This document shows positions 20,677 to 64,000 of a stretch of DNA of 64,000 bases, one piece after another; within the stretch, counting starts at the first letter, position 1; each line of letters starts with the position of its first letter. Made by a program: the position numbers and the translations under genes. Origin of the DNA: Mizuhopecten yessoensis. Taxonomy: Eukaryota. Location: positions 463,235 to 527,234 of the forward strand of contig NW_018404833.1 of assembly GCF_002113885.1 (NCBI RefSeq), given 5' to 3'. The notes beneath the pieces were generated by a model. The model was not told the origin of the DNA, did no database searches, and saw nothing but the letters and a program-made list of their open reading frames with translations.

Positions 20677-23600
20677 ATACATCCTTAACCCCAAAACAGA
20701 TCACACGTACCCTGTGTAAGGTAACATACATCCTTAACCCCAATACAGATCACACGTATACCGTGTAAGGTAACATACATCCTTAATCCCAATACAGATC
20801 ACACGTATACCGTGTAAGGTGGCGTACATCCTTAACCCTAATATAGATCACACGTATACCGTGTAAAGTAACATACATCCTTAACCCCAATACAGATCAC
20901 ACGTATACCGTGTAAGGTAACTTACATCCTTAAACCAAATACAGGTAACACGTATACCGTGAAAGGAAACATACATCCTTAATCCCAATACAGATCACTC
21001 GAATACCGTGTAAGGTAGCGTACATCCTTAACCCTAATACAGATCACACGTATACCGTGTAAGGTAACATACATCCTTAAACCAAATACAGGTCACACGT
21101 ATACCGTGTAAGGTAACATACATCCTTAACCCCCAATACAGATCACACGTACCATGTGTAAGGTAACATACATCCTTAACCCCAATACAGATCACACGTA
21201 TACCGTGTAAGGTAACATACATCTTTAACCCCAATACAGGTCACACGTAAACCGTGTAAGGTAACATACAGTTGTGGGATCGCACAACGTTACACGATGT
21301 GCGGTGTGCGCACGATGTGTGCACGGTGTGTGAACGATGTGTGCACGATGTGCGAACGATAAAAATCTGGGCGATCAAATCTTGCGCACATTTGTGTGCA
21401 CGACGGACGAACGTTGTGCGATAACAATCGTGGTTGGTGCAAATTGAGGAATGCCTTAACAATATATACGGTTTCGTGTTTAAACATATAAACCTGATTT
21501 TTACGTATGTTTCTATATTCTACCTACACCTATAAACTTATCTTTATATCTATACTTTCTTAAATTTAGAAATTGTGTTTTTGGTATTTTTTAAAAGACC
21601 TTAATCGACACCTGTGAAATCACAACACAGTCCCGTATACAGGTAAACATAGCCACTAGCCGTCTACATGTACCTGGACGGTAGTTTTCCCCCGCCCGGG
21701 GCGCTTACGTACTTCGTCGGGTAGGGCCAGGGGTGTGAAAACACAGGTGAAGGGGAGCTATAGGCAAACCGAATGCAAATAACAAATACTAAACGTCCAG
21801 CTGTGTTTTCATTACGGTTATACGGTATCGCATATCAGCTCTATGTGTCAGGGACAGGCCCGGTCAAACCCCGGTAACTCATCAAATTGTTAATTACATA
21901 TTCTGTTACCTGGGCGCGAAACCCATTCTTGACAGGCTAACGGTCACTGTAATACTGTGTTACACGCATTGTACAACTACATAATCTTCATTACTTTGAT
22001 GAGATATTACAATAATACATACAGTTTCCATTATTGCATACGAGCTTTCCGTATTTTTTTCATTCCGTAATATTGATCTACAAGTTGTACCCAATCGCCC
22101 CGGTGTGCGGAGAGAAGCACACAACGGGGGGAACGATTGTTAAATCGCACAGTTGTGCGCACCATGTGTGGACGATGTGCGGACGGTGTGTGAACGATGT
22201 ATGCACGGTGTGCGCACGCTATTTTTGGTGCGTTGTGCGGTCACACAACTGTACATCCTTAACCCCAACACAGATCACACGTATACCTTGTAAGGTAACA
22301 TACATCCTTAACCCCAATACAGGTCACACATATACCGTGTAAGGTAACATACATCCTTAACCCCAATGCAGGTCACACGTATACCGTGTAAGGTAACGTA
22401 CATCCTTAACCCCAATACAGATCACACGAATACCGTGTAAGGTAACATACATCCTTAACAACACAGATCACACGTATACCTTGTAAGGAAACATACATCC
22501 TTAACCCCAATACAGATCACACGTACTCTGTATAAGGTAACATACATCCATACATCTTTAACCCCAATACAGGTCACACGTATACCGTGTAAGGTAACGT
22601 ACATCCTTAACCCCAATACAGATCACACGTACTCTGTATAAGGTAACATAAATCCTTAACCCCAATACAGATCACACGTACTCTGTATAAGGTAACATAA
22701 ATCCTTAACCCCAATACAGATCACACGTACTCTGTATAAGGTAACATAAATCCTTAACCCCAATACAGATCACACGTACCCAGTGTTTGGTAACATACAT
22801 CCTTAACCCCAATGCAGGTCACACGTATACCGTGTAAGGTAACGTACATCCTTAACCCCAATACAGATCACACGTACTCTGTATAAGGTAACATACATCC
22901 ATACATCTTTAACCCCAATACAGGTCACACGTATACCGTGTAAGGGAACATACATCCTTAACCCCAATACAGATCACTCGTATACCGTGTAAGGTAACAT
23001 ACATCCTAAACCCCAATACAGATCACACGTATACCGTGTAAGGTAACATACATCCTAAACCCCAATACAGATCACACGTACCCTGTATAAGGTAACATAC
23101 ATCCTTAACCCCAATACAGATCACACGTATACCGTGTAAGGTAACATACATCCTTAAACCAAATACAGGTCACACGTATACCGTGTAAGGTAAAATACAT
23201 CCTTAACCCCAATACAGATCACACGAATACCGTGTAAGGTAACATACATCCTTAACCCCCATACAGATCACACTTACCCCGTGTAAGGTAACATACATCC
23301 TTAACCCCAATACAGATCACACTTGCCCCGTTTAAGGTAACATACATCCTTAATCCCAATACAGATCACACGTATACCGTGTAAGGTAACATACATCCTT
23401 AACCCCAATACAGGTCACACGTATACCTTGTAAGGTAAAATACATCCTTAACCCCAATACAGATCACACGTACTCTGTATAAGGTAACATACATCCTTAA
23501 CCCCAATACAGGTAACACGTATACAGTGTAAGGTAACATACATCCTTAACCCCAACACAGATCACACTTACCCCGTGTAAGGTCACATACATCCTTAACC

Positions 23601-24318
23601 CCAATACAGATCGCGCTTGCCCCGTTTAAGGTAACATACATCCTTAATATACAGATCACACGTATACCGTGTAAGGAAACATACATCCTTAACCCCAATA
23701 CAGAACACACGTATACCGTGTAAGGTAACATATATCCTTAACCCCAATACAGATCACACGTACTCTGTATAAGGTAACATACATCCTTAACCCCCATACA
23801 GATCACACTTACCCCGTGTAAGGTCACATACATCCTTAACCCCAATACAGGTCACACGTATACCTTGTAAGGTAAAATACATCCTTAACCCCAATACAGA
23901 TCACACGTATATCGTGTAAGGTAACATACATCCTTAACCCTAATTCAGATCACACGTATACCGTGTAAGGAAACATACATCCTTAACCCCAATACAGGTA
24001 ACACGTATACAGTGTAAGGTAACATACATCCTTAACCCTAATTCAGATCACACGTATACCGTGTAAGGAAACATACATCCTTAACCCCAATACAGATCGC
24101 GCTTGCCCCGTTTAAGGTAACATACATCCTTAATCTCAATACAGATCACACGTATACCGTGTAACGTAACATTCATCCTTAACCCCAATACAGATCACAC
24201 GTATATCGTGTAAGGTAACATACATCCTTAACCCTAATACAGATCACACGCATACCGTGTAAGTTGGCATACATCCTTTACTCCAATACAGATCACACGT
24301 ACCCCGTGTAAGGTAACA
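20677..24318. repeat. 49-bp satellite (about 54 copies) interrupted by a MITE
   Basis: Unit CATACATCCTTAACCCCAATACAGATCACACGTATACCGTGTAAGGTAA. Confidence 0.95.
21269..22251. mobile_element. Non-autonomous DNA transposon (Tc1/mariner-type TA TSD), 983 bp
   Basis: TIRs CAGTTGTGGGATCGCACAACG ... CGTTGTGCGGTCACACAACTG (19/21 match); TA duplicated at the satellite position AACA-TA-CATCC. Confidence 0.88.
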
Positions 24319-40106: not shown

Positions 40107-40878
40107 TCAATGACAGTTACTACTTAAATGACAGTTAATATTTAAATGACAGTTACTACTATCAATGACAGTAACTACTTTAACGACAGTTACTACTTTA
40201 ATGACAGCTACTACTTTAACGACAGTTACTACTTTAATGACAGCTACTAATTTAATGACAGTTACTACTTTAATGACAGCTACTACTTTAACGACAGTTA
40301 CTACTTTAACGACAGCTACTAATTTAATGACAGTTACTACTTTAATGACAGCTACTACTTGAACGACAGTTACTACTTTAATGACAGCTACTAATTTAAT
40401 TACAGTTACTACTATTAATGACAGTTACTAATTTAATGACAGTTACTATTTGAATTACAGTAACTATTTGAATGAAAGTTACTCCTATTAATGACAGCTA
40501 CTAATTTAATGACAGTTACTACTTGAATTACAGTTATTATTTTAATGACAGTTACTATTTTAATGACAGTTACTACTATCAATGACAGTTACTACTATCA
40601 ATGACAGTTACTACTTTAACGACAGTTACTATTATCAATGACAGTTACTATTTTTAATGACAGTTACTACTATCAATGACAGTTACTACTATCAATGACA
40701 GTTACTACTTTAACGACAGTTACTACTATCAATGACAGTTACTATTTTAATGACAGTTACTACTATCAATGACAGTTACTATTTTAATGACAGTTTCTAC
40801 TATTAATGACAGCTACTAATTTAATGGCAGTTACTCTATCAATGACAGTTACTACTTTAATTAAAGTTACTACTATCA
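40107..40878. repeat. 18-bp minisatellite (about 43 copies)
   Basis: AATGACAGTTACTACTTT. Confidence 0.93.
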
Positions 40879-44800: not shown

Positions 44801-47800
44801 TAATGTAAAGACAATGTAAAAGTAATGCAAAGATAAATTAATGTAAAGATAAACAAAAGATTTTTTTTAAAGTACCAGAAATACCATCATAATTTTATCA
44901 AAAGTAAAACCTGTTCATTGATTGGTGTTTCTATATTTCAATGATGATGTCACAACACATGGCTGTTGTAACTTTATTTTATCAAGGTGACTCAAAGTAA
45001 TCATTACACTTCTCCCATTAAAGGATGTATTCCATTCTTAAATCTGAAAACTCACACAACATCTTGCTTTTTATCCGAGTTACGTGTGATAATAATACAT
45101 TGGGAGAATGATTTTAAAATTTTGAACTTACACTGTGGCGACGAGGTGACCCTGTGCCATCCTGTCCCGTGTCTGATGACTGAAATACAATGTGCAAACA
45201 GGGTGAGGAATTGGACTGGAAATATCACTGATATGTTCAAAAGAAGGAAACACACAACAGAAACATTTAGGTATACATAAAATCAATGTAACAGTGAGTT
45301 TTTCAATTCATTTCAGTGTTACTACACTACACAGGTAGATTGATAGACTGACCGTCACCGTCCTAACAACACAGGTTATGAGACAACTCTATCCACAGAG
45401 AGTGGAACCATAGAGCTGTACTACTAGACTTCAAAATGTACTCACCATTACTGAAGCATAAGGGTTAGACTTGCTGGAATTTGCTGATTTGGATGGTTTT
45501 CCATTGCTGAAAAGACAATGTTTTAGACCTTAATTCAAAATAATTGTCTTGTCAAAAGTATCATGCTAACGATTAAATAGTCAATAAGATTTGTTTATCT
45601 ACTTCAAAGAAAAAGAAACACCAGCTAGTTATTATCGAGTTCATTGCAAATTATAGATTTCTTTTTTTTTCTTGTGAACAAAATCAAAATAAACTGAAAA
45701 ACGTCCAGAAGGAATACTGAAGGAAAGATATAGCGATCAAAATTTGTATGTGTGTAAGTGTTCTTCACCTGTAAACAGAGTTTTATTTACAAAAAAAAGC
45801 TATTACCATATCTGACTTGCAATTAGCTGACAGGAGCTTGAGGCACATAAATATAATCTCTGACTCAATTTTGTGTGGAGGTAGGATTGGGATTGGGGGG
45901 TGGGCTTATTACAGGACAATGGAGTAGCATTTCTAGTTACTTCTACTTGGCTATCAAAGATATGGGTGGGGTTATAAACAAGCATGGGCGTAATGCTGGA
46001 TAACAATGGTAGACACTACTGGTCAGTTGTGTTACTGGCCCTTTAATACATGGTACTGAGAATAGCACAGTCAAACCTGTATTAAGTAACCATCCTTAGC
46101 ATGGGACATTCAAACAGTGGTCTCTTAATGAAGGTGGTCTCTCAGTACAGGTTGAAATCATACACTAGGTGGTCACAATACATACTCACCAACCAGAGTA
46201 AATGTTTAGAAACATACAGGTGGTCTCTTAACTCTTTCACCCCTATGTAGCTTTAATGAACTCTACCATACATAATTGATATGGGTAAGTCCATTATGGT
46301 CCACAGTGGTGGAAGGGGTAAGGGAGATGTGGCTGTACCTGATCTTCTCTAGCCTGGCCTTCAGCTGACGCACTTCTCGGTTGTGCTGTTCCTTTATCTT
46401 CTGTATCTCCTCCGCTCTGTCCTGCTGCTCCTTCTTTCGCTCCACCTTTCTCCTATTCTCTCGCTCGACTTTCTCTTCAAACATTCTTCTCTTCACCTCC
46501 TGCTCAACCAAGGCATTTATTCTACAACAAAATTAATCTTGCTGCGTAAGATTTAGCCTGAAAATGTACAACTGACCTAGGTAATAACTAGGAATTGTAT
46601 TGGACTTGCTGAATCCTCCTGCAAATATTGCAAATATAACCACTGTTAAAACAGAGCTGTGAAAATATCGATTAAAACCAAATTGGGTCAAATAATGTAA
46701 TTTCTCTTTCCGCTAGACTTTTTTTTTTTTTTAAATCAAGTTAATGTACCCGTTACTTTTTAAATTTCCTTCCTAATATCATGTTAATTGTGGTGATTCA
46801 TACCATAACAGATTTCAGACTAGACCAAAGTTATTTCAATTGTACGGTAAAAGTGGCAATTTTTGCATGGGGAAATGTTTGCATTGTGTCATTAAGCTGA
46901 TTGTGGTGTGGTAATCTTCACATTGGTAATTGTTCTGAAACCTATACATTCTATACACCTATTGTCTACCAATAAATATTCTATACACTTATTGTCTACC
47001 AATAAATATTCTATACACTTATTGTCTACGAATAAATATTCTATACACCTATTGTCTACGAATAAATATTCTATACACTTATTGTCTATAAATAAATATT
47101 CTATACACCTATTGTCTATGAATAAATATTCTATACACCTATTGTCTACGAATAAATATTCTATACACCTATTCTACGAATAAATATTCTATACACCAAT
47201 TGTCTACGAATAAATATTCTATACACATATTGTCTACGAATAAATATTCTATACACATATTGTCTACGAATAAATATTCTATACACATATTGTCTACAAA
47301 TAAATATTCTATACACATATTGTCTACGAATAAATATTCTATACACCTATTGTCTACGAATAAATATTCTATACACCTATTGTATACGAATAAATATTCT
47401 ATACACCTAGTGTCTACAAATAAATATTCTATACACTTATTGTCTACAAATAAATAATCTATACACCTATTATCTACAAATAAAAATTCTATACACCTAT
47501 TATCTACAAATAAATATTCTATACACCTATTATCTACAAATAAATATTCTATACAACTATTATCGACAAATAAATATTCTATACACCTATTATCTACAAA
47601 TAAATATTCTATACACCTATTATCTACAAATAAATATTCTACACACCTATTATCGACAAATAAATAATCTATACACTTATTATCTACAAATAAATATTCT
47701 ATACAGCTATTGTCTACAAATAAATATTCTATACACCTAATATCTACAAATAAATATTCTATACACCTATTATCTACAAATAAATATTCTATACACCTAT

Positions 47801-50800
47801 TGTCTACAAATAAATAATATTCTATACACCTATTATCTACGAATAAATATGCTATACACCTATTATCTACGATTAAATATTCTATACACCTATTGTCTAC
47901 GAATAAATATTCTATACACCTATTGTCTACGAATAAATATTCTATACACCTATTGTCTACGAATAAATAAATATTCAAGTGTGGATATTTTCAGTCTAGT
48001 TCACTCAACAGGAAAAAACGCATACCTTTCCACATTGCAAAATTTTTCACTTTTCCATTAATATTTTCTGGATTTTATTACAATTTTTCATTTATTTTCA
48101 ATATACACAGAACAGTCTAAATCGTGGGTTTCAACGTTTACTGTCATCACAGTCGACACACGTACCTCTCTTGTCTCTCCATCTCCTGCAGCTTGAGTAC
48201 CTCATACTCGATCTTGTCCATTTCGGCATTCCTCTCCTCCTCAAACCGTCGTTGTTTCTCCTCCAGATCTGATCTCCCTGCCTCCATTTCCTTCCTCAGT
48301 GCTTCTATCTCCTGTAGAAATTATGTAATTAAAACCTCAAGATAGCAACCTCCAGTAAACAATAAATATTTCTTTACTGAAGCAGTTTTGAAAATACGGT
48401 ATTTCAGGAAACATTACATATTTTTATTTTTATACCTCTAGTGAAAATCCTATAATCTGATTGGTCGAAACAAATTATTCATTTTACACTGTCACATTCG
48501 CTACAACATTGAGTCAACGGGAGATTGCTTCCCAACGCCCTAGCAACGGGTGACAGTGTGTGTAACAGTGCAAAATAGTAACCGTGCAAAGAAGATGCGC
48601 AAATGGTTTGTTTCAACCGACATTTTTTTGCTTGCGAATCATCACGCATGTAGTTCTGCAGGTGCTCGTCGGTGATTAGTTTGAAGATGTAACGCTGAGA
48701 TGAGTGAGATTTCCAAGCGCTTCATTCATGTGATAGTCAGAAGAAACAATCGGCCGTCTGCTCAATGAAGTAAAGAATGGCAAGATTTGCAGATGTCAAG
48801 TTTGGTGATTTGGATAAACTTTTGACGACGGATAAGAACTCTAAAACATGCAGCGTACCATCAAACGAACATACAAAAAGCAGTTGGAATTGATATGAAA
48901 AAACAAGTGTTTTTGGGTAGTGAAACAAAAGGACACTATCACCGATGATATGAAGAAGCTTTTGGTAACTCCAAAGTCTGTTTCAACAATTAGATTGTAG
49001 ATGATGATATGAAGAAGCTTTTTGGTTACTCCATAGTCTGTTTCAACAATTAGATTGTAGATGATGATATGAAGAAGCTTTTTGGTTACTCCATAGTCTG
49101 TTTCAACAATTAGATTGTAGATGATGATATGAAGAAGCTTTTTGGTAACTCCATAGTCTGTTTCAACAATTAGATTGCCTTTAGGTATTATAAAATAAAT
49201 ACTACAATCATTAGAGTGTGACAGTGCCTATATATGTGCAATCGCACATGACATCACTTTTCATGACATTATTTGTGATTGGCCAAGTCAAAATGTTAGA
49301 CAATTTTAAGCTTAAGATTGTTTCATGATCCTGGGGCCTGGTCTAGTGAGCGTCAATATTTCACAATACTAAATCAATGATACTAGTTTTAGAAGCTACA
49401 GATTATATTTTCTTTACAACATCACAATGCTTCCTGCAAAATGCAGTACTTTTCTCTTGAAGTGTTGATGCACTCCAACTTGCTCAATGATATCAAACAG
49501 CATTATGTTACATCTGAAATATTATTTTTATTTTTTATTTATTTTAAATTGGTACATAAGTGGTTAAATATGAATCTGGAAAGTGATGTTGACCATGACT
49601 CCATCTTGTTACTGCCTATGTTATTGGGCAGTTGTGATTTATTTTTTAGTTGAAATATGGTGTTCTGGGCATATAATTAAGACAGTTGGCGGTATTATTT
49701 GTACCTAGTGGAATTTTTAAACAAGTGATCTATGAGTTTCTATTGTATGTTGCACAATATTAAGCAAACAAATAAGTCCCTACTTACCTGCATCTTCCTC
49801 TCCAGTCTGGCATCTTCAGACAGCCTCTCCCCACTGTTTTCTTCTGCTTCACACAATGCTGTAGCTTCTTTGTTCATCAGTAACCTTTAGTTATCCAAAT
49901 ATACAGAATTCTTTACACCAATGTCAAGCACCCTTATCTTTTTGAGTTTTGTTTTTTCCCCGATATTGAGCTCAATGACATCACTTTAAAAATAACAATT
50001 GTACATTTATAACAATAAGTGATTTTAAAAAATTGTTTCTAAATACCCTGGTAAATTGAAATTTACATCAACACTTGTTTCATTTTGTTTCATTTTTTAT
50101 CTTATCACTTACCTTTATTAATTTTTTATTTGATTTTTTTTTCTATAAGTGATCAGATAAAAAAAAATGAAAAAAAATGAAACAACTGTTAATGTCAATT
50201 AACCATGGTATTTAGAAACAATTTTTAATCTAATTTAATTTAATTTGATTTATCAAAGCATTAATTATCAACATAAAATTTCCCTTGCAATATTAAATTT
50301 TAACCAAATTACATTTTATGGAATATCAATATTTGTTTCAAAATTGCCTCTTCCTTCAAGGTAATTTTTTTTGTAAGAATCAAATTTTTGTAATTCTTAT
50401 TTCCAAAATAAAATTTTCTGCAAAAACACAACCTGCAAAATCTTAGCCAATTAATCAATCTTTACTATAGAAACTTGTACAATGTACAATTGTCATTAAA
50501 CCTGAAATCTGTGAAAACCAAATCCTGACAAATTGACAATTTTAGCAAAGTTGCAAAAATCTAATGACAGTGAAAAAAGCACAATTTTAAAAGATTTTCT
50601 AGAGAAATATTATTAGAAGACATCCAAACTTTCTATATCATTTTAATTTTTTTGATCAGATTAACTAAAAGATAACTTCAGATATACCAGTAATGCCACT
50701 TATGGTATGTTGTGATATATACCTTTCTCTTTCTGATTGTATTGTCTTCAGCTCCTTTTTGTAGTCAGTTTCCACCTCTATGACCTTGTTACTGATATCG

Positions 50801-56800: not shown

Positions 56801-59800
56801 TGTGAAAACATGAATTCTTTGATGATAATAATGGCACATGTGTTGATAGAAAATTCTGATACTTACAAATACAGCTTGGATTTAGCCAGAAGTATAATTA
56901 TATATATATAAATAAATGAAATAATTGACAGTACCATAGAGATAAGTAAAGGAAATATTTCATACCTGTATTTCTTAGATAAATTTGAGGAAACAAATTT
57001 GTTCCAAGTAAAAACTGAATGAAAAGAATATGTAAGATACACACTGAAAATGCTATAAATGTAAAATGAAAACTACATTTTGTAATTCTAAACAATTAAA
57101 TTAAATTAAACAAAAGAATGCTTTTTAATGCAGAAATGATGATAAAATGCTCTGATTATAATGAAAAACTTACCTTTTATCTTCAAGCTTGGCTAAATCT
57201 TCTTGATTATTCTGTTCCAACTCAAATCTGAAGCACATTTAAAATATTTTAAAATTGTTTTCGGAAAAAATAACGATACATTACGAAAGTGAACTCAAAA
57301 GTGATTTTTTTAGCTTTAATAAAAACATTCTCCGTCATCAAATATATTCACATTTAAATAACCAGGGTAAAACATCTTTAATGTACATATTTTTGGGTAA
57401 ATCTTAATCACTGTACAGTTTTAAAAGATAATTATGAATGAAATACAATGTATTAAATCTATAGGGAATCTTTTGTATAACAACAACATTTTACATTGAG
57501 TTTAAATGAGAAAGAACAACAAAAGTAAACAAATCAGTGATACCACATTAACTCCATCCATGTAATATGTTGAACACCTACCCTGCGGCCAGGAGGGAGA
57601 GGTTCTCAGAAGACTTATACAGGTCTGTCATGGAGTGACCCAGAAGGGATGTTCGGGAGAAACTCAATCCACACTAGAATTAAATAGAAAACAAAGTTAA
57701 AACAGTCAAAATTAATGTTTATTATGACCATAGCTTAAATAATTTGAATAAAAAAACACCTGAGTGGTGGCTTTAACATTGATATACAATGTTATACCCC
57801 CCTTTCCCCACTTTGACCTTTTAACCTTGACAGATGATCACCAAAATCTAAGCTAAGTTAGGGTTGTCCCCTGTAAGAAAGCAGTCACACCCAGTGTCCA
57901 TGCTGTCAGTTGCCAATGTAGCCACTGAATGTATGTAATTTAATTTGCCTTCAGTAATTCCAATCAGACTGCAAAACTGAAAACTCACTTCCTGTCCATC
58001 ATTACACATATCCTATCCATGATAATGGCATTGCTGCAACGCCAGAAAAAACATAGGAGTGGCACCGATGATGTAAGGAGTACTAAGTGTACTTACACTT
58101 TGACTTGGGACTGATGATGTAAGGAGTACTAAGTGTACTTACACTTTGACTTGGGACTGATGATGTAAGGAGTACTAAGTGTACTTACACTTTGACTTGG
58201 GACTGATGATGTAAGGAGTACTAAGTGTACTTACACTTTGACTTGGGACTGATGATGTAAGGAGTACTAAGTGTACTTACACTTTGACTTGGGACTGATG
58301 ATGTAAGGAGTACTAAGTGTACTTACACTTTGACTTGGGACTGATGATGTAAGGAGTACTAAGTGTACTTACACTTTGACTTGGGACTGATGATGTAAGG
58401 AGTACTAAGTGTACTTACACTTTGACTTGGGACTGATGATGTAAGGAGTACTAAGTGTACTTACACTTTGACTTGGGACTGATGATGTAAGGAGTACTAA
58501 GTGTACTTACACTTTGACTTGGGACTGATGATGTAAGGAGTACTAAGTGTACTTACACTTTGACTTGGGACTGATGATGTAAGGAGTACTAAGTGTACTT
58601 ACACTTTGACTTGGGACTGATGATGTAAGGAGTACTAAGTGTACTTACACTTTGACTTGGGACTGATGATGTAAGGAGTACTAAGTGTACTTACACTTTG
58701 ACTTGGGACTGATGATGTAAGGAGTACTAAGTGTACTTACACTTTGACTTGGGACTGATGATGTAAGGAGTACTAAGTGTACTTACACTTTGACTTGGGA
58801 CTGATGATGTAAGGAGTACTAAGTGTACTTACACTTTGACTTGGGACTGATGATGTAAGGAGTACTAAGTGTACTTACACTTTGACTTGGGACTGATGAT
58901 GTAAGGAGTACTAAGTGTACTTACACTTTGACTTGGGACTGATGATGTAAGGAGTACTAAGTGTACTTACACTTTGACTTGGGACTGATGATGTAAGGAG
59001 TACTAAGTGTACTTACACTTTGACTTGGGACTGATGATGTAAGGAGTACTAAGTGTACTTACACTTTGACTTGGGACTGATGATGTAAGGAGTACTAAGT
59101 GTACTTACACTTTGACTTGGGACTGATGATGTAAGGAGTACTAAGTGTACTTACACTTTGACTTGGGACTGATGATGTAAGGAGTACTAAGTGTACTTAC
59201 ACTTTGACTTGGGACTGATGATGTAAGGAGTACTAAGTGTACTTACACTTTGACTTGGGACTGATGATGTAAGGAGTACTAAGTGTACTTACACTTTGAC
59301 TTGGGACTGATGATGTAAGGAGTACTAAGTGTACTTACACTTTGACTTGGGACTGATGATGTAAGGAGTACTAAGTGTACTTACACTTTGACTTGGGACT
59401 GATGATGTAAGGAGTACTAAGTGTACTTACACTTTGACTTGGGACTGATGATGTAAGGAGTACTAAGTGTACTTACACTTTGACTTGGGACTGATGATGT
59501 AAGGAGTACTAAGTGTACTTACACTTTGACTTGGGACTGATGATGTAAGGAGTACTAAGTGTACTTACACTTTGACTTGGGACTGATGATGTAAGGAGTA
59601 CTAAGTGTACTTACACTTTGACTTGGGACTGATGATGTAAGGAGTACTAAGTGTACTTACACTTTGACTTGGGACTGATGATGTAAGGAGTACTAAGTGT
59701 ACTTACACTTTGACTTGGGACTGATGATGTAAGGAGTACTAAGTGTACTTACACTTTGACTTGGGACTGATGATGTAAGGAGTACTAAGTGTACTTACAC

Positions 59801-62800
59801 TTTGACTTGGGACTGATGATGTAAGGAGTACTAAGTGTACTTACACTTTGACTTGGGACTGATGATGTAAGGAGTACTAAGTGTACTTACACTTTGACTT
59901 GGGACTGATGATGTAAGGAGTACTAAGTGTACTTACACTTTGACTTGGGACTGATGATGTAAGGAGTACTAAGTGTACTTACACTTTGACTTGGGACTGA
60001 TGATGTAAGGAGTACTAAGTGTACTTACACTTTGACTTGGGACTGATGATGTAAGGAGTACTAAGTGTACTTACACTTTGACTTGGGACTGATGATGTAA
60101 GGAGTACTAAGTGTACTTACACTTTGACTTGGGACTGATGATGTAAGGAGTACTAAGTGTACTTACACTTTGACTTGGGACTGATGATGTAAGGAGTACT
60201 AAGTGTACTTACACTTTGACTTGGGACTGATGATGTAAGGAGTACTAAGTGTACTTACACTTTGACTTGGGACTGATGATGTAAGGAGTACTAAGTGTAC
60301 TTACACTTTGACTTGGGACTGATGATGTAAGGAGTACTAAGTGTACTTACACTTTGACTTGGGACTGATGATGTAAGGAGTACTAAGTGTACTTACACTT
60401 TGACTTGGGACTGATGATGTAAGGAGTACTAAGTGTACTTACACTTTGACTTGGGACTGATGATGTAAGGAGTACTAAGTGTACTTACACTTTGACTTGG
60501 GACTGATGATGTAAGGAGTACTAAGTGTACTTACACTTTGACTTGGGACTGATGATGTAAGGAGTACTAAGTGTACTTACACTTTGACTTGGCACTGATG
60601 ATGTAAGGAGTACTAAGTGTACTTACACTTTGACTTGGGACTGATGATGTAAGGAGTACTAAGTGTACTTTCCCTTTGACTTGGGACTGATGATGTAAGG
60701 AGTACTAAGTGTACTTACACTTTGACTTGGCACTGATGATGTAAGGTAGTACTAAGTGTACTTACACTTTGGAGTTCTTGTTTCATCTTAGCAGCCTCAG
60801 CAGGATGATTAAACCTGAACATGTTAGTCCTGCCAAGCAAAATCACAGCCCCTACAAAACATCAACATCACAGCCCCTTAAACAAAACATCAAAATCACG
60901 TCCCCTACAAAACATCAACATCACAGCCCCTTAAACAAAACATCAACATCACAGCAACTTTTAACAAAACATCAAAATCACAGCCCCTACAAAACATCAA
61001 CATCACAGCCCCTTAAACAAAACATCAAAATCACAGCCCCTACAAAACATCAGCATCACAGCCCCTTAAACAAAACATTAAAATCACAGCCCCTTTAACA
61101 AAACATCAAAATCACAGCCCCTACAAAACATCAACATCACAGCCCCTTAAACAAAACATCAACATCACAGCCCCTTAAACAAAACATCAACATCACAGCC
61201 CCTTAAACAAAACATCAAAATCACAGCCCCTTATTAAATTACAATGAAACTTGATAAAGAAGTCTTTAAAAACAAATTATCTAAAAAAGATAGGCGGCAC
61301 AGTAGTCTAGTGGTAGGATGCTGGATTTGTGACCGAAGGGTTGTCGGTTTGAGTCACAGCACAGCACAGCACTGTGTTGTATCTTTAAGCAAGATACTTT
61401 ACTACACTTGTTCCAGTCTACTCAGCTGTAAATGAGTTTGTGGTTGGGCAGTGCTATAATTGTTGAATGCTAGCTGTGAGCGCTAAAAATGGCAGCACCG
61501 GCTGTATGCTCCCAAGAGAGTTGAGAAAGATATTGGCTGATTGCAAAGGCCCTATAACCATGGATAATAATTTGTGAACCGCTTTGAGATGACCTAGTAA
61601 CTAGGTTGTGATGAAGCGGTATATAAGAACCTCAAATTATTATCATAAATTTCTACAACACATTCAAGCATCTTCATTACATTGCCATTAAAAGTGGTAG
61701 TTAACATACTTGAATGTATATATAAAGCAATGGACTTTAGTGATTATGATCATGATGTGGTAGGTGTAAATTATGATATTGTCACAGAACCTTACCTTGA
61801 GTAAGCTTGACTGGATCGGCGACCACTGAGCCGTTGATGGAGCACATGGCCCCCTGCAGTGGGTATAGAGTTACCTCCCCATCTTTATGGACAATCTCAC
61901 AGTGGTTCTCTTCGACATCTATCCCAGCTATCTCTGTGTTAAACATTAAATGTGTCATTTATCGAATGGTGTTAGACCAGGTATTAAAACTATTCAATAA
62001 GTTCTGATTTACTGCGACAAAGACTGCTACATAGTATGCTAACCATCCTTGCCATTGCAATAGATACATTTTTGCTAGAGATGCACTATCCTTTTAGAAT
62101 TCAGGTTAAAGCTGTAAATTTAAAATTGATCATTGATTAAAATCAAACCTGCTAAGCATCACTCCTACAAAATTAACTATGAACAGAATCTGTTTATGTC
62201 TTGACCAGTCTTAAATTCCAAAATTTAAAAGCTGATCACTTGATCTAAAGTGCGTATTGCAGAGTTATCTTCTCTTGTGAGCAGGTATCGATTGTAATAC
62301 GTCATTGGTTTGAGTGAGAAAATTACATCGTTTTCTCAAAAATTGATGACGTTACTCTCACAAACAAATGACGTAACAATCAATACCTGCTCACAAGAGC
62401 ATATAACTCTGCAATACGAAAAGACGGAATAGTCTTACAATGTCAGCCCATGTTTTAGTTCTAAACGTCTTTAGCAGAGGCCACATTGTAACCATCTTGG
62501 GTGTTGGATCAGGGAGATAATAGATTGCACATTTATGCATCAATACATCATATGGAGTTTCATTCGAATTTGGCAAGTAACTTTGGATACAAGTATCTGA
62601 TAAATTTATGGTGGAATAATGAATAAATTTAGAACAGAAACCATTTTCCTCAAGTTTGTTCACAGACTTTGTTTAACTAAAGAAATCCACAGAAACAACC
62701 GCAAGGGGACAACATATCAACTTCAAATTTAATTCATTTAATTTTTATAGTTCTAAAATAACTACATGTAGATGGGACTGATTCAAATACCCTCTGTGAA

Positions 62801-63259
62801 CCACATTAAAAACAATAAACTGGCAGTATGAGATATCTGATCCTTACCAATATCTGGCATCTCCTCCGAGTCCGGCCTTCCCACAATGGTACTTCCCTCC
62901 TGCAACCAAACATCCATAGCAATGGTACAAAAAGGGTTTTCAGATACTGATTCTAGATACTAAATGAACAATGAATTGAATATAAAATTCTGGAAAAGCT
63001 ACCAAATTCGTCAAATTGACAACGTTAATACATACAGAATAACAACAACTATTTTAGTGGTGATATCTGTTTCTGTTTTGTGAAGGAAGCAGGTATCGCC
63101 AGCTTAAATGCTGATTTTACATTAAGAGAGCTTGCTTACCTTTAGATGGTACAACATGATCCCTGTGCTGAGGATATCATCATCTATACCAATCAGGTGG
63201 GGAAGAGTAGAGTCCAACACCACACCGAGTCCCTCTTTACGTATGGCAAGTGTCTGGTC
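41730..63259 (-). CDS. KIF16B: Kinesin-3 KIF16B orthologue, 5'-partial (19 coding exons; FHA, coiled coil, C-terminal PX domain)
   Basis: Manually spliced exons, all GT-AG with consistent phases: 63140-63259, 62848-62899, 61796-61933, 60766-60851, 57582-57673, 57174-57227, 53675-53807, 52496-52588, 51690-51839, 50723-51531, 49788-49884, 48166-48311, 46339-46521, 45446-45506, 45132-45179, 43546-43665, 43035-43124, 42672-42752, 41730-41885. Peptides such as TLAIRKEGLGVVLDSTLPHLIGIDDDILSTGIMLYHLK, GAVILLGRTNMFRFNHP, RRYSRFR and FPPKKLF match the recalled KIF16B FHA and PX regions. An extra small exon in the coiled-coil region could have been missed. Confidence 0.93.
42672..42752 (-). CDS. KIF16B: KIF16B PX-domain exon 3
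   Basis: ttacag| INSLVFPPKKLFSRSEKVVAERQKQLE |gtatgt. Confidence 0.93.
43035..43124 (-). CDS. KIF16B: KIF16B PX-domain exon 2
   Basis: ttccag| VIIGDDSWTIYRRYSRFRQVHQDWKRKIPE |gtttgt; RRY phosphoinositide-binding motif. Confidence 0.93.
43546..43665 (-). CDS. KIF16B: KIF16B PX-domain exon 1
   Basis: cccag| IEPLGSSLTLSGDLNLLKVTIPTYRLQGYGSDHHYEYEVK |gtaaga. Confidence 0.9.
43700..44045 (-). mobile_element. tRNA-derived SINE, same family as 61292-61643, opposite orientation
   Basis: The reverse complement aligns by eye along the full length with the 61.3-kb copy. Confidence 0.8.
44663..44852. repeat. 11-bp minisatellite
   Basis: AATGTAAAGA(T/C). Confidence 0.85.
45132..45179 (-). CDS. KIF16B: KIF16B 48-nt linker micro-exon
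   Basis: tttcag| SSDTGQDGTGSPRRHS |gtaagt; symmetric phase 0. Confidence 0.65.
45446..45506 (-). CDS. KIF16B: KIF16B small linker exon
   Basis: tttcag| NGKPSKSANSSKSNPYASVM |gtgagt; this exon is needed to restore phase 2 to phase 0. Confidence 0.75.
46232..46317. mobile_element. Second copy of the TTAA MITE, nested in another MITE-like repeat (starting CAGTCAAACCTG near 46068)
   Basis: Internal sequence shared with 38841-38923. Confidence 0.65.
46339..46521 (-). CDS. KIF16B: KIF16B coiled-coil exon
   Basis: ttgtag| INALVEQEVKRRMFEEK...KARLEKI |gtacag; the INA.(I/V)E.EV.RR motif matches recalled KIF16B. Confidence 0.88.
46945..47975. repeat. 30-bp minisatellite (about 34 copies), intronic
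   Basis: ATTCTATACACCTATTGTCTACGAATAAAT. Confidence 0.95.
48166..48311 (-). CDS. KIF16B: KIF16B coiled-coil exon
   Basis: ctacag| EIEALRKEMEAGRSDLEEKQRRFEEERNAEMDKIEYEVLKLQEMERQER |gtacgt. Confidence 0.88.
48428..49215 (+). mobile_element. Crypton-like non-autonomous element containing a 60-bp x4 internal repeat (48945-49177)
   Basis: MARFADVKFGDLDKLLTTDKNSKT at 48777 resembles a Crypton ORF start; ends TTTTATACCTC / GGTATTATAAAA. Confidence 0.45.
49788..49884 (-). CDS. KIF16B: KIF16B coiled-coil exon
   Basis: LLMNKEATALCEAEENSGERLSEDARLERKMQ |gtaagt; the acceptor is a weak AAG. Confidence 0.72.
50723..51531 (-). CDS. KIF16B: KIF16B large coiled-coil exon (809 nt)
   Basis: E/K-rich ORF 50665-51507; ttgtag acceptor and gtatat donor; phase 0 in, phase 2 out. 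Confidence 0.9.
51690..51839 (-). CDS. KIF16B: KIF16B coiled-coil exon
   Basis: aacag| ESEKIRRQHEEQTSQLQALVSRRAELDKLKADTEVEVTAKVKDLMCQKSQ |gtaagt. Confidence 0.85.
52496..52588 (-). CDS. KIF16B: KIF16B coiled-coil exon
   Basis: ttccag| EISIGEKLKILEEKEQFITQQAAAKTQNLDQ |gtatat. Confidence 0.8.
53675..53807 (-). CDS. KIF16B: KIF16B coiled-coil exon
   Basis: ttgtag| LQIGRLEKRHMKADEDRDEAQDSLEKYVQEKQDQLLMMQEQFDE |gtagaa; lies inside ORF 53597-53944. Confidence 0.8.
54140..54258. repeat. About 21-bp minisatellite
   Basis: CAAAATGGTAACAAAATGTTT. Confidence 0.75.
57174..57227 (-). CDS. KIF16B: KIF16B exon
   Basis: ttcag| FELEQNNQEDLAKLEDKR |gtaagt; phase 2 at both ends. Confidence 0.85.
57582..57673 (-). 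CDS. KIF16B: KIF16B exon
   Basis: ttctag| CGLSFSRTSLLGHSMTDLYKSSENLSLLAAG |gtaggt; SMTDL..S.ENLS motif. Confidence 0.88.
58061..60770. repeat. 46-bp tandem array (about 59 copies, nearly identical) built from the KIF16B exon/intron donor junction
   Basis: Unit GACTGATGATGTAAGGAGTACTAAGTGTACTTACACTTTGACTTGG; same register at 58201 and 59581 (1380 = 30 x 46). Confidence 0.97.
60766..60851 (-). CDS. KIF16B: KIF16B exon (FHA end), flanked on both sides by splice-site repeats
   Basis: ttgtag| GAVILLGRTNMFRFNHPAEAAKMKQELQS |gtaagt. Confidence 0.92.
60838..61235. repeat. 25/28-bp tandem array (about 15 units) built from the KIF16B acceptor junction
   Basis: Units ATCACAGCCCCTACAAAACATCAAC and ATCACAGCCCCTTAAACAAAACATCAAA. 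Confidence 0.93.
61292..61643 (+). mobile_element. tRNA-derived SINE (Nin/Deu-like core, LINE-like tail)
   Basis: A-box-like TAGTCTAGTGG and B-box-like GGTTTGAGTC; core GGCAGCACCGGCTGTATGCTCCC; tail GCGGTATATAAGAACC..TTATTAT; a second copy at 43700-44045. Confidence 0.8.
61796..61933 (-). CDS. KIF16B: KIF16B exon (FHA)
   Basis: cacag| EIAGIDVEENHCEIVHKDGEVTLYPLQGAMCSINGSVVADPVKLTQG |gtaagg. Confidence 0.93.
62253..62418. mobile_element. Palindromic MITE (about 165-bp foldback)
   Basis: CGTATTGCAGAGTTAT..CTCTTGTGAGCAGGTAT.GATTG mirrored by CAATCAATACCTGCTCACAAGAG..ATAACTCTGCAATACG. Confidence 0.75.
62848..62899 (-). CDS. KIF16B: KIF16B exon (FHA start)
   Basis: gcag| EGSTIVGRPDSEEMPDI |gtaagg; carries the FHA G-R motif. 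Confidence 0.92.
63140..63259 (-). CDS. KIF16B: KIF16B exon (pre-FHA)
   Basis: ctttag| DQTLAIRKEGLGVVLDSTLPHLIGIDDDILSTGIMLYHLK |gtaagc. Confidence 0.95.
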
Positions 63260-64000
63260 CTAAAGTCATAAAGAAATAGAAATATCGTCAAAATTTGTGT
63301 ATAGTGCACACTTTTTTAAAGGAAAAATGAAAGTGTCAAGAAAGGGGTGTGCACTATATCCACAAGAACAATCCAAAACCAGTCCTCGGTCGCAACCATT
63401 TATCGTGAATTTTTCCAGGATTTTCGGAAATGTTTTTAAATATGCTTCCAAAGTGAGGTGCTTCCATATACTAATTATAATTAAATTCATAATTATGAGG
63501 GAATGATGTGTGCACAATGTACATATCAAGTGTAAACAATAGATACTCTGGCAATACCAGGTAATGGCTTGCACTTATCTGGGTGCATATGATAGACAAA
63601 AGATAGCGAAAGCAGCAATCGTGGTGGATGTAAATTTCAGAATGGCTTACAGTTCAATTTCACTTTTAAACATATAAGCCTTAAAATATGTTACCATATT
63701 TTATCTAGATCTATAAGCTTTAATACCTCTCTCTATATAAATGTTACTTTTTTGTTTTGACACATGTACTAAACATATCAGATGTTTACAAACTGAATTA
63801 CATTGTATTCAATTCACATGAAAATTCTTCTCACACTACCGGAGTATATACAATTCAATTGAGTACACTAATCAAACTGCTTATTGTGATATTTCTTCAT
63901 TCATCAATTCCTGGAAAAAACTTAAGTTTTATAAGACCAACTTCAGGGTTGTGTTGAAACTTTAAAAATATTTTAATATATATAATGTATTCATTTTATA

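What the first reader, a model, noticed from the sequence alone, without database searches (positions are those of the whole stretch)
58061..60770. A 2.7-kb satellite made of about 59 copies of a functional 5' splice site
Seen in the sequence: on the KIF16B sense strand the real exon ends ...CTCCAAAGT|GTAAGTACACTTAGTAC. The downstream array unit is CCAAGTCAAAGT|GTAAGTACACTTAGTACTCCTTACATCATCAGTC, so nearly every unit regenerates the last 6 exonic nt plus the same GTAAGT donor. The intron therefore opens with dozens of equally strong competing donors. Using the next donor adds 47 nt (frameshift), and reading on hits an in-frame TAA. Inference: either the first site is selected with unusual precision, or the array acts as a U1 snRNP-loading/decoy platform and a copy-number-tunable NMD switch for KIF16B.
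Basis: partly seen in the sequence, partly recalled or inferred. Interest (0 to 1): 0.85.

Follow-up and report, generated by a model that had tools for sequence, protein, structure and literature searches.

The report
Splice-donor minisatellite in scallop KIF16B intron
One intron of the Yesso scallop KIF16B gene opens with about 58 near-identical 46-bp copies of the exon's last 6 bases plus its splice donor. The repeat is real, but it is a known kind of repeat, common in this genome, and the RNA evidence I could get shows only the first donor in use.

Summary
Window 58060-60771 (sense = minus strand) holds a 46-bp tandem array of 58.9 copies at 99% identity. Its first unit spans the exon/intron boundary. 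There are 58 GTAAGT sites, counting the real one at 60765, and one further unit has a mutated site. The next donor adds 47 nt and shifts the frame, and read-through meets a TAA.

The gene is KIF16B of Mizuhopecten yessoensis. The NCBI protein maps at 100% identity and joins 60766 to 57673. One 1135-nt RNA contig leaves the genome exactly at 60766. Oyster, clam and Pecten proteins are colinear across this junction.

The array occurs only at this locus. It is absent from the same intron in Pecten maximus and in a more distant bivalve. In an independent DNA run the unit's depth is about 40-50 times single-copy depth.

This is a minisatellite whose first unit spans the boundary. That kind is already described: amphioxus 'mirages', and human F7, IFI6, CBS, LMNB2 and PDGF. 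In F7, only the most upstream donor is used. This scan has already noted at least eight such arrays on other DNA of this genome.

I found no support for a U1 decoy or an NMD switch, and these data cannot exclude one. Verdict: a new member of a known kind, low interest.

The parts
58060..60771 (-). 46-bp minisatellite of 58.9 units. The first unit takes in the last 6 exonic nt plus the donor. There are 57 spare GTAAGT sites.
   Evidence: TRF; donor list; unit census, 55 of 58 identical; no other locus in the genome.
60766..60851 (-). KIF16B exon of 86 nt, the end of the FHA region. It encodes residues 530-558 of the annotated scallop protein (..AVILLGRTNMFRFNHPAEAAKMKQELQS).
   Evidence: tblastn of P0017 at 100% identity; RNA contig piece 60766-60850; splice-site letters.
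60760..60765 (-). Authentic 5' splice site GTAAGT (context AGT|GTAAGTAC). Positions +1 to +7 are complementary to the scallop U1 5' end, which reads ATACTTACCTG.
   Evidence: U1 genes found and their 5' end read.
60715..60717 (-). In-frame TAA, reached if the transcript reads through the first unit. It lies inside the second GTAAGT.
   Evidence: Translation of the read-through.
60667..60672 (-). The only unit whose donor is mutated (GAAAGT, preceded by GG).
57674..58059 (-). Unique 3' remainder of the intron. The whole intron (57674-60765) is 3092 nt, and 2706 nt of it is array.
   Evidence: Sequence; exon mapping.
57580..57673 (-). The next KIF16B exon (CGLSFSRTSLLGHSMTDLYKSSENLSLLAAG), residues 559-589 of P0017.
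   Evidence: colinear with orthologs.
60838..61233 (-). Second array (28/53-bp period), upstream of the same exon. It copies the exon's acceptor plus its first ~14 nt, giving 13 pseudo-acceptors. The copy in use is the last one, AG at 60853-60852.
   Evidence: TRF; pattern list; RNA contig joint 61795|60850; the Pecten acceptor matches four further array units.
61796..61933 (-). The preceding KIF16B exon (FHA domain).
   Evidence: Pfam FHA; RNA contig piece 61795-61933; splice letters.

Best explanation
This is a young, locus-specific minisatellite. It arose in the Mizuhopecten lineage by tandem duplication, and then slippage or unequal exchange, of a 46-bp piece made of the last 6 nt of a KIF16B exon and the first ~40 nt of its intron. 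Every unit therefore repeats the 5' splice site.

The copies lie inside the intron and are removed with it. The spliceosome uses the first donor, the one next to the exon body, and joins it to the acceptor at 57673. That gives the conserved KIF16B reading frame. The spare donors are silent by-products that the cell tolerates.

Steps that are shown: the array, its position, use of the first donor, and its absence from relatives. Steps that are inferred: how the first donor is chosen. By analogy with human F7 intron 7, this would be a 5'-to-3' 'first site wins' selection tied to the exon. Predicted pairing between neighbouring donor copies in the RNA may also help.
For: Array anatomy, with edge units that vary and a uniform core, as real minisatellites have.

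The unit is found nowhere else in the 988-Mb genome, so it is not a transposon or a dispersed satellite.

The gene is KIF16B. Kinesin-3 motor exons lie upstream on the same strand. It has an FHA domain. Its PX domain's best solved match is KIF16B. The NCBI protein 'KIF16B isoform X2 [Mizuhopecten yessoensis]', on a contig of the same length as mine (601616), maps at 100% identity and joins 60766 to 57673.

In run X18 a 1135-nt contig lies on 63261-63139, about 62898-62848, 61933-61795 and 60850-60766. A further 174 of its letters do not lie on 60765-60525, so the transcript leaves the genome at the first donor.

Oyster, clam and Pecten proteins are colinear across the junction.

The same intron, at the same position, is 1609 nt in Pecten maximus and about 250 nt in GCA_029721355.1. 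Neither has an array at the donor.

In an independent DNA run (X8) the 76-nt cyclic contig of the unit has depth 602.6, against 12.4 and 15.2 for neighbouring single-copy contigs. That suggests dozens of uniform units really exist.

In RNA run X18 the unit contig has depth 3.7 against 9.5 for the exon contig. Per unit that is under 1% of the exon, a rough figure.

Published precedents: F7, IFI6, CBS, LMNB2 and PDGF (PMC1557585) and amphioxus mirages (PMC3087553).
Against: Use of the first donor rests on one assembled contig in one run plus the gene annotation.

All runs were kept as contigs, which drop rare forms, so minor use of the next donors cannot be excluded. In human IFI6 and CBS the two next sites are used.

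I did not see the 174 letters beyond the donor, so the join to 57673 is taken from the annotated protein, not from the contig.

Transcripts from later donors would carry early stop codons and could be degraded before they are seen.

The tool warns that contig depth is a poor measure, so both depth ratios are order-of-magnitude only.

The selection mechanism is an analogy from mammals and is untested in molluscs.
Confidence: 0.8

Rival explanations
1. The array is a regulatory device. Its 57 strong U1-binding sites in the nascent RNA would load or soak up U1 snRNP, and occasional use of a downstream donor would yield frameshifted, NMD-targeted mRNA. Copy number would then tune KIF16B output.
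For: All 57 spare sites have the same -6 to +40 context as the real one, and 7 contiguous pairs to the scallop U1 5' end. Every alternative donor leads to an early stop. Array RNA is detectable in two RNA runs at low depth. In human IFI6 and CBS the next two pseudo-sites are used (PMC1557585).
Against: No contig shows a downstream donor in use. The array is missing in Pecten maximus and in a more distant bivalve, so it is not a conserved element. Earlier notes report the same kind of array at many unrelated genes of this genome, and at acceptors and stop codons as well. That fits a mutational by-product better than a device. Array RNA per unit is under 1% of exon depth in X18, as ordinary pre-mRNA would give (rough).
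Confidence: 0.07
2. The long array is an assembly artefact. A short repeat of a few units would have been inflated to fill a gap of estimated size in a scaffolded short-read assembly.
For: The genome is in 82659 pieces with N runs. The 55 identical units in a row could not be ordered by short reads. No X8 contig was laid on the exon or on units 0-2, so the boundary itself is not confirmed in a second individual.
Against: In independent DNA run X8 the unit closes on itself as a 76-nt contig (46 + 30, the size expected if the contigs were built from 31-letter words, which I assume). Its depth is 602.6 against 12.4-15.2 for flanking single-copy contigs, about 40-50 units, and the unit occurs at no other locus. 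The edge units carry their own variants, as in real arrays. The RNA contig ends exactly at the boundary.
Confidence: 0.05
3. The downstream donors are kept silent mainly by RNA structure, not by scanning or exon definition. Each donor sits in a near-palindrome (AAGUGUA-AG-UACACUU), so neighbouring units pair donor to donor and hide the GUAAGU. The first donor escapes because U1 binds it before the second unit has been transcribed.
For: In the predicted folds, successive donors pair in two 7-bp stems with a small internal loop. Six generic units fold at -50 kcal/mol, z = -6.5 against shuffles. Exon plus the first three units folds at -31.1 kcal/mol, z = -3.0.
Against: This is prediction only. 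Repeats that contain a palindrome always beat shuffles. In the fold of the first units the real donor pairs with donor 1 as well. In F7, silence of the pseudo-sites did not need a special neighbouring intronic element (PMC1557585, section headings).
Confidence: 0.1

Closest known systems
Human F7 intron 7 VNTR (37-bp minisatellite; Borensztajn et al. 2006, PMC1557585)
   Same: The first unit spans the exon/intron boundary (4 exonic + 33 intronic nt there, 6 + 40 here). The authentic donor is followed by identical pseudo-donors, and only the most upstream site is used in normal mRNA.
   Different: F7 has 5-9 units and a weak site (UGG/gugggu). Here there are about 58 units and a near-consensus GTAAGT. 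The F7 mechanism was tested with 50 constructs; nothing has been tested here. F7 length polymorphism is documented; here it is only hinted at.
Human IFI6 (6-16), CBS intron 13, LMNB2 and PDGF boundary minisatellites (as reviewed in PMC1557585)
   Same: The splice donor is repeated in the following intron by a minisatellite: 25 pseudo-sites in IFI6, 15-20 repeats in CBS.
   Different: In IFI6 and CBS the two nearest pseudo-sites are also used. I could not test for that here. Here any extra unit breaks the reading frame.
Amphioxus 'mirages' (Adh3 and globin genes; PMC3087553)
   Same: Minisatellite-like tandem duplications of exon/intron boundaries at either the 5' or the 3' side of an exon. They are reported not to disturb normal splicing. 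Core units are homogenised and edge units diverge. Here both sides of one exon carry such arrays.
   Different: The host is a mollusc, not a cephalochordate. There are many more units (58.9 against 3-6 in the globins), and the exonic part is very short (6 nt).
Other splice-site minisatellites noted by this scan in the same genome (eEF2K, FZR1, ANAPC4, NHE, MPPE1, IFI27-like, thiolase)
   Same: Same genome and same architecture. Where RNA was laid, the first copy was in use.
   Different: A different gene and an unrelated unit sequence. Those are unchecked AI notes, and I did not re-test them.

Membership tests
Exon/intron-boundary minisatellite ('mirage' / F7-IVS7 type) | Head-to-tail tandem array with minisatellite-sized units | tested here: met
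   Period 46, 58.9 copies, 99% matches.
Exon/intron-boundary minisatellite ('mirage' / F7-IVS7 type) | The first unit spans the boundary, so the authentic splice site is repeated in the intron | tested here: met
   The array starts at 60771 and the exon ends at 60766. There are 57 further GTAAGT sites. The exon end is fixed by the RNA contig and the annotated protein.
Exon/intron-boundary minisatellite ('mirage' / F7-IVS7 type) | Normal mRNA uses the authentic (most upstream) donor | tested here: inconclusive
   One RNA contig (X18) and the NCBI protein use donor 0. No raw reads were available, so minor use of other donors is untested.
Exon/intron-boundary minisatellite ('mirage' / F7-IVS7 type) | Length varies between individuals (VNTR behaviour) | tested here: inconclusive
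   About 40-50 units by depth ratio in run X8, against 58.9 in the assembly. The measure is too rough to call a difference.
Exon/intron-boundary minisatellite ('mirage' / F7-IVS7 type) | Local, lineage-specific origin (not a dispersed repeat, not conserved) | tested here: met
   This is the only locus in the genome. The array is absent from the orthologous intron of Pecten maximus and of GCA_029721355.1.
KIF16B (kinesin-3 with FHA and C-terminal PX) | Kinesin-3 motor, FHA and PX domains in one gene, with orthology to KIF16B | tested here: met
   Motor exons upstream; FHA; PX best match KIF16B, 6ee0/2v14; annotated KIF16B of M. yessoensis maps at 100%.
Regulated unproductive splicing (alternative donor coupled to NMD) | Alternative junctions observed in RNA | tested here: inconclusive
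   None among the contigs of X12, X17 and X18. Contigs drop rare forms, and NMD would remove these transcripts.
Regulated unproductive splicing (alternative donor coupled to NMD) | The alternative site introduces a premature stop | tested here: met
   +47 nt puts a TGA 10 nt into the next exon. Later donors include the TAA at 60717-60715.
Regulated unproductive splicing (alternative donor coupled to NMD) | The regulatory element is conserved among related species | tested here: not met
   No array in Pecten maximus or in the more distant bivalve.
Recursive splice sites | An acceptor AG directly followed by GT, so that a 5' splice site is re-formed after each step | tested here: not met
   The consensus unit holds no AGGT. 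Its AG dinucleotides are followed by T.

The most novel reading that the evidence does not exclude
The array of 57 near-consensus U1 sites acts in cis on the KIF16B transcript. It might hold U1 snRNP on the nascent RNA, or leak into frameshifted, NMD-degraded products. Its variable length would then set KIF16B dosage between individual scallops. The matching acceptor array on the other side of the same 86-nt exon could add to that.
Probability: 0.05. Interest if true: 0.6.

Novelty: new member of a known kind. Interest (0 to 1): 0.2.

Why it matters
Taken alone, it matters little. It is one more tolerated boundary minisatellite in a genome where about one sixth of this window is tandem repeat.

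Its value is as a natural test case. One essential-looking, single-copy gene carries 57 intrinsically identical strong donors behind the real one and 13 pseudo-acceptors in front of the same small exon, yet it yields the conserved protein.

Together with the many similar arrays noted in this genome, scallops could serve as a natural panel for studying how the first 5' splice site is picked. So far that has been studied mainly in human F7 minigenes. They could also show why exon boundaries are so often caught in tandem duplication.

Tried and rejected
1. Reads across the whole intron. Read laying turns away stretches with a long repeat, so I did not send the array. I laid window 60525-63300, which holds the exon, its first five units and three upstream exons. 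The join to 57673 could therefore not be seen directly. The loose-end rows for the key contig were not among those listed.

2. Raw reads. All 23 runs offered were kept as contigs, so donor use could not be counted.

3. More scallop RNA fragments spanning the junction. Searching residues 465-654 of the annotated protein among proteins of similar length gave nothing at E <= 1e-30.

4. A closer relative. The Argopecten irradians and Ostrea edulis proteins were not on record for a locus look-up. The 61%-identical fragment P0001 sits on a 1.2-kb contig without the relevant exon.

5. Known RNA families. Rfam found none in 57000-62000.

6. Dispersed satellite or transposon origin. Rejected: the unit occurs only here.

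7. Recursive splicing. Rejected: there is no AG|GT in the unit.

8. No joined (spliced) model. I built and searched none. Exons were searched one by one by reference, and the public annotated protein P0017 was used for mapping.

9. Chance estimate for this gene alone. I placed about nine arrays at random in about 18 kb of intron with about 24 exons. About 0.4 arrays would then overlap a boundary by up to 15 nt. Two do, which gives a Poisson tail near 0.05. This is my own arithmetic, not a tool result. The coincidence at this locus alone is only mildly unusual. I did not test recurrence across the genome.
Full report
WHAT IS THERE. The sense strand of the gene is the window's minus strand. Tandem Repeats Finder reports one array at 58060-60771 with period 46, 58.9 copies, 99% matches and no indels. 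Reading the sense strand, I count 58 GTAAGT sites. They lie at 60765, 60718, 60626 and then every 46 nt down to 58096. The unit at 60672 has lost its site and reads GGGAAAGT. Of the 58 in-register 46-mers, 55 are identical. The three variants lie at the two ends of the array, and unit 0 has one extra A, so the first spacing is 47 nt. Only the last six exonic bases, CAAAGT, belong to the repeat. The intron runs from 60765 to 57674 and is 3092 nt long, of which 2706 nt are array.

THE GENE. Upstream on the same strand and contig lie exons with kinesin motor motifs. Their best solved matches are KIF13B and KIF1A, which are kinesin-3 motors. Inside the window there is an FHA exon. There is also a PX exon whose best solved match is the KIF16B PX domain, 6ee0/2v14, at E = 3e-6. 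A protein search returned 'kinesin-like protein KIF16B isoform X2 [Mizuhopecten yessoensis]', 1328 aa, on a contig of 601616 bases. That is the length of my own contig C1506. This protein maps back to the window at 100% identity. Residues 530-558 fall on 60852-60766 and residues 559-589 on 57673-57581. The FHA exon has no close second copy in the genome. I built and searched no joined spliced model. Exons were searched one at a time by reference, and the public annotated protein was used for mapping.

FRAME. The intron is in phase 0. Reading on unspliced gives 16 codons and then a TAA at 60717-60715, which lies inside the second GTAAGT. Use of the second donor would add 47 nt, and the next exon would then be read in the frame that has a TGA 10 nt in. 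Every later donor includes the TAA.

DONOR STRENGTH. The scallop has many U1 genes with the usual 5' end, ATACTTACCTG. The site AGT|GTAAGTAC pairs with it at +1 to +7. Position -1 is a mismatch. From -6 to +40 all copies are the same as the real site, so the sites are 'equally strong' as far as sequence goes.

RNA EVIDENCE. All public runs offered were kept as assembled contigs, none as raw reads. Read laying turns away stretches with a long repeat, so I did not send the array. I laid window 60525-63300, which holds the exon, its first five units and three upstream exons. I used three transcriptome-sized runs (X12, X17, X18) and one independent DNA run (X8). In X18 one 1135-nt contig lies on 63261-63139, about 62898-62848, 61933-61795 and 60850-60766. 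The skipped parts have GT..AG ends on the minus strand, so this is spliced RNA. A further 174 letters of that contig lie beyond 60766 but not on 60765-60525. The transcript therefore leaves the genome exactly at the first donor. I was not shown those 174 letters. The join to 57673 rests on the annotated protein and on colinearity with orthologs. In Ostrea, Mya, Pecten, Argopecten, Saccostrea and the bivalve of GCA_029721355.1, the two exon peptides abut with no insertion, or in Mya with a short one. No contig showed a later donor in use. Contigs drop rare forms, so this shows presence of the normal junction, not absence of others.

IS THE ARRAY REAL? The assembly is a scaffolded one in 82659 pieces, and 55 identical units cannot be ordered by short reads. 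The number 59 should not be trusted to the unit. But in DNA run X8, from a sample not flagged as the source, the generic unit appears as a 76-nt contig. That size is 46 + 30, which is what a repeat closing on itself gives if the contigs were built from 31-letter words, as I assume. Its depth is 602.6, while the neighbouring single-copy contigs have 12.4 and 15.2. The unit is found at no other place in the genome. The tool warns that contig depth is a poor measure, so I take this only as an order of magnitude. It means some 40-50 uniform units exist in a second animal. In RNA run X18 the same unit contig has depth 3.7 against 9.5 for the exon contig. Per unit that is under 1% of the exon, which is what ordinary unspliced RNA would give.

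ORIGIN AND AGE. In Pecten maximus the same exon ends ...CCGAAGT|GTAAGTAG at the same codon. The intron is 1609 nt, and its only repeat is an unrelated 40-bp one 58 nt further in. In a more distant bivalve (GCA_029721355.1) the intron is about 250 nt with no repeat. Between Yesso scallop and Pecten only the exons and a few flanking bases still align. The intron position and the AAGT|GTAAGTA context are therefore old, and the array is new in the Mizuhopecten line. The near-perfect identity of the units says the same.

THE SAME EXON'S OTHER END. The RNA contig also shows that the exon begins at 60851, after ...TTTTGTAG, and not at the CAG 21 nt further on. That acceptor is the last unit of the 28/53-bp array at 60838-61233. 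The array holds 13 further copies of AG followed by the exon's first ~14 nt. The Pecten acceptor region matches four of them at 95%, and Pecten itself has no such array. This 86-nt exon therefore has both of its splice sites amplified, and in each case the copy next to the exon body is the one used.

HOW IT MOST LIKELY WORKS. This is a tolerated by-product of tandem duplication. The copies lie in the intron and leave with it. The choice of the first donor is inferred by analogy. In human F7 intron 7, a 37-bp minisatellite whose first unit spans the boundary gives four to eight identical pseudo-donors. Only the most upstream is used, and the authors showed a 5'-to-3' oriented selection that later sites cannot compete with (PMC1557585). 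A possible local helper is that each donor sits in a near-palindrome (AAGTGTA-AG-TACACTT). The predicted folds pair neighbouring donors with each other: z = -6.5 for six units and z = -3.0 for the exon plus the first units. This is prediction only, and repeats with palindromes always beat shuffles.

WHAT IS KNOWN. The same paper lists IFI6 (25 pseudo-sites, two of them used), CBS, LMNB2 and PDGF as further human cases. In amphioxus such boundary duplications are called 'mirages'. They occur at either side of an exon and are reported not to disturb splicing (PMC3087553). I found no paper on molluscs. This scan has already noted at least eight such arrays on other DNA of this same genome (eEF2K, FZR1, ANAPC4, NHE, MPPE1, an IFI27-like gene, thiolase and three neighbouring genes), with the same conclusion. 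Those notes are unchecked leads. They gave me the two literature threads, which I then read myself.

CHANCE. The array itself is far beyond chance. Its coincidence with a splice site is less striking. Tandem repeats make up 17% of this window. By a rough estimate of my own, about 0.4 arrays in this gene would overlap an exon boundary by chance, against two seen.

VERDICT. The decoy or NMD-switch half is unsupported and untested. This is a new member of a known kind, of low interest by itself. It would be useful as one item in a natural panel of splice-site arrays in scallops.

Noticed in passing
window 60838-61233 (minus strand): The acceptor actually used by this exon (AG at 60853-60852) is the last unit of a 28/53-bp array that holds 13 more copies of AG plus the exon's first ~14 nt. 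Both ends of the 86-nt exon are therefore amplified. Pecten maximus has no such array.
   Followed up: partly
L017:24640-24766 (GCA_029721355.1, KIF16B ortholog): In this other bivalve the next exon's end plus its donor (..GCAGG|GTAAGT) is repeated 2.9 times with a 44-bp period. This is a small boundary array one exon further on in the same gene, so the tendency is not limited to the Yesso scallop.
   Followed up: partly
window 61362-61640 and 62199-62477: Two intronic stretches collect contigs at huge summed depth in DNA (10^5) and are also high in the RNA runs. They look like pieces of very abundant dispersed repeats or transposons.
   Followed up: no
window 58060-60771, each unit: Each donor lies in a near-palindrome (AAGTGTA-AG-TACACTT). 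This might favour hairpins and slippage in DNA as well as donor-to-donor pairing in RNA.
   Followed up: partly
window, whole: Tandem arrays with TRF score of 200 or more cover 10.9 kb of 64 kb (17%). Among them are large intronic arrays at 46948-47969 (30-mer x34), 40109-40874 (18-mer x42) and 22252-24318 (49-mer x42).
   Followed up: no
L011:5350-8040 (C1506, just upstream of the window): An N run of 2675 bases lies inside the motor-domain part of the KIF16B gene. I did not fill it or look it up.
   Followed up: no
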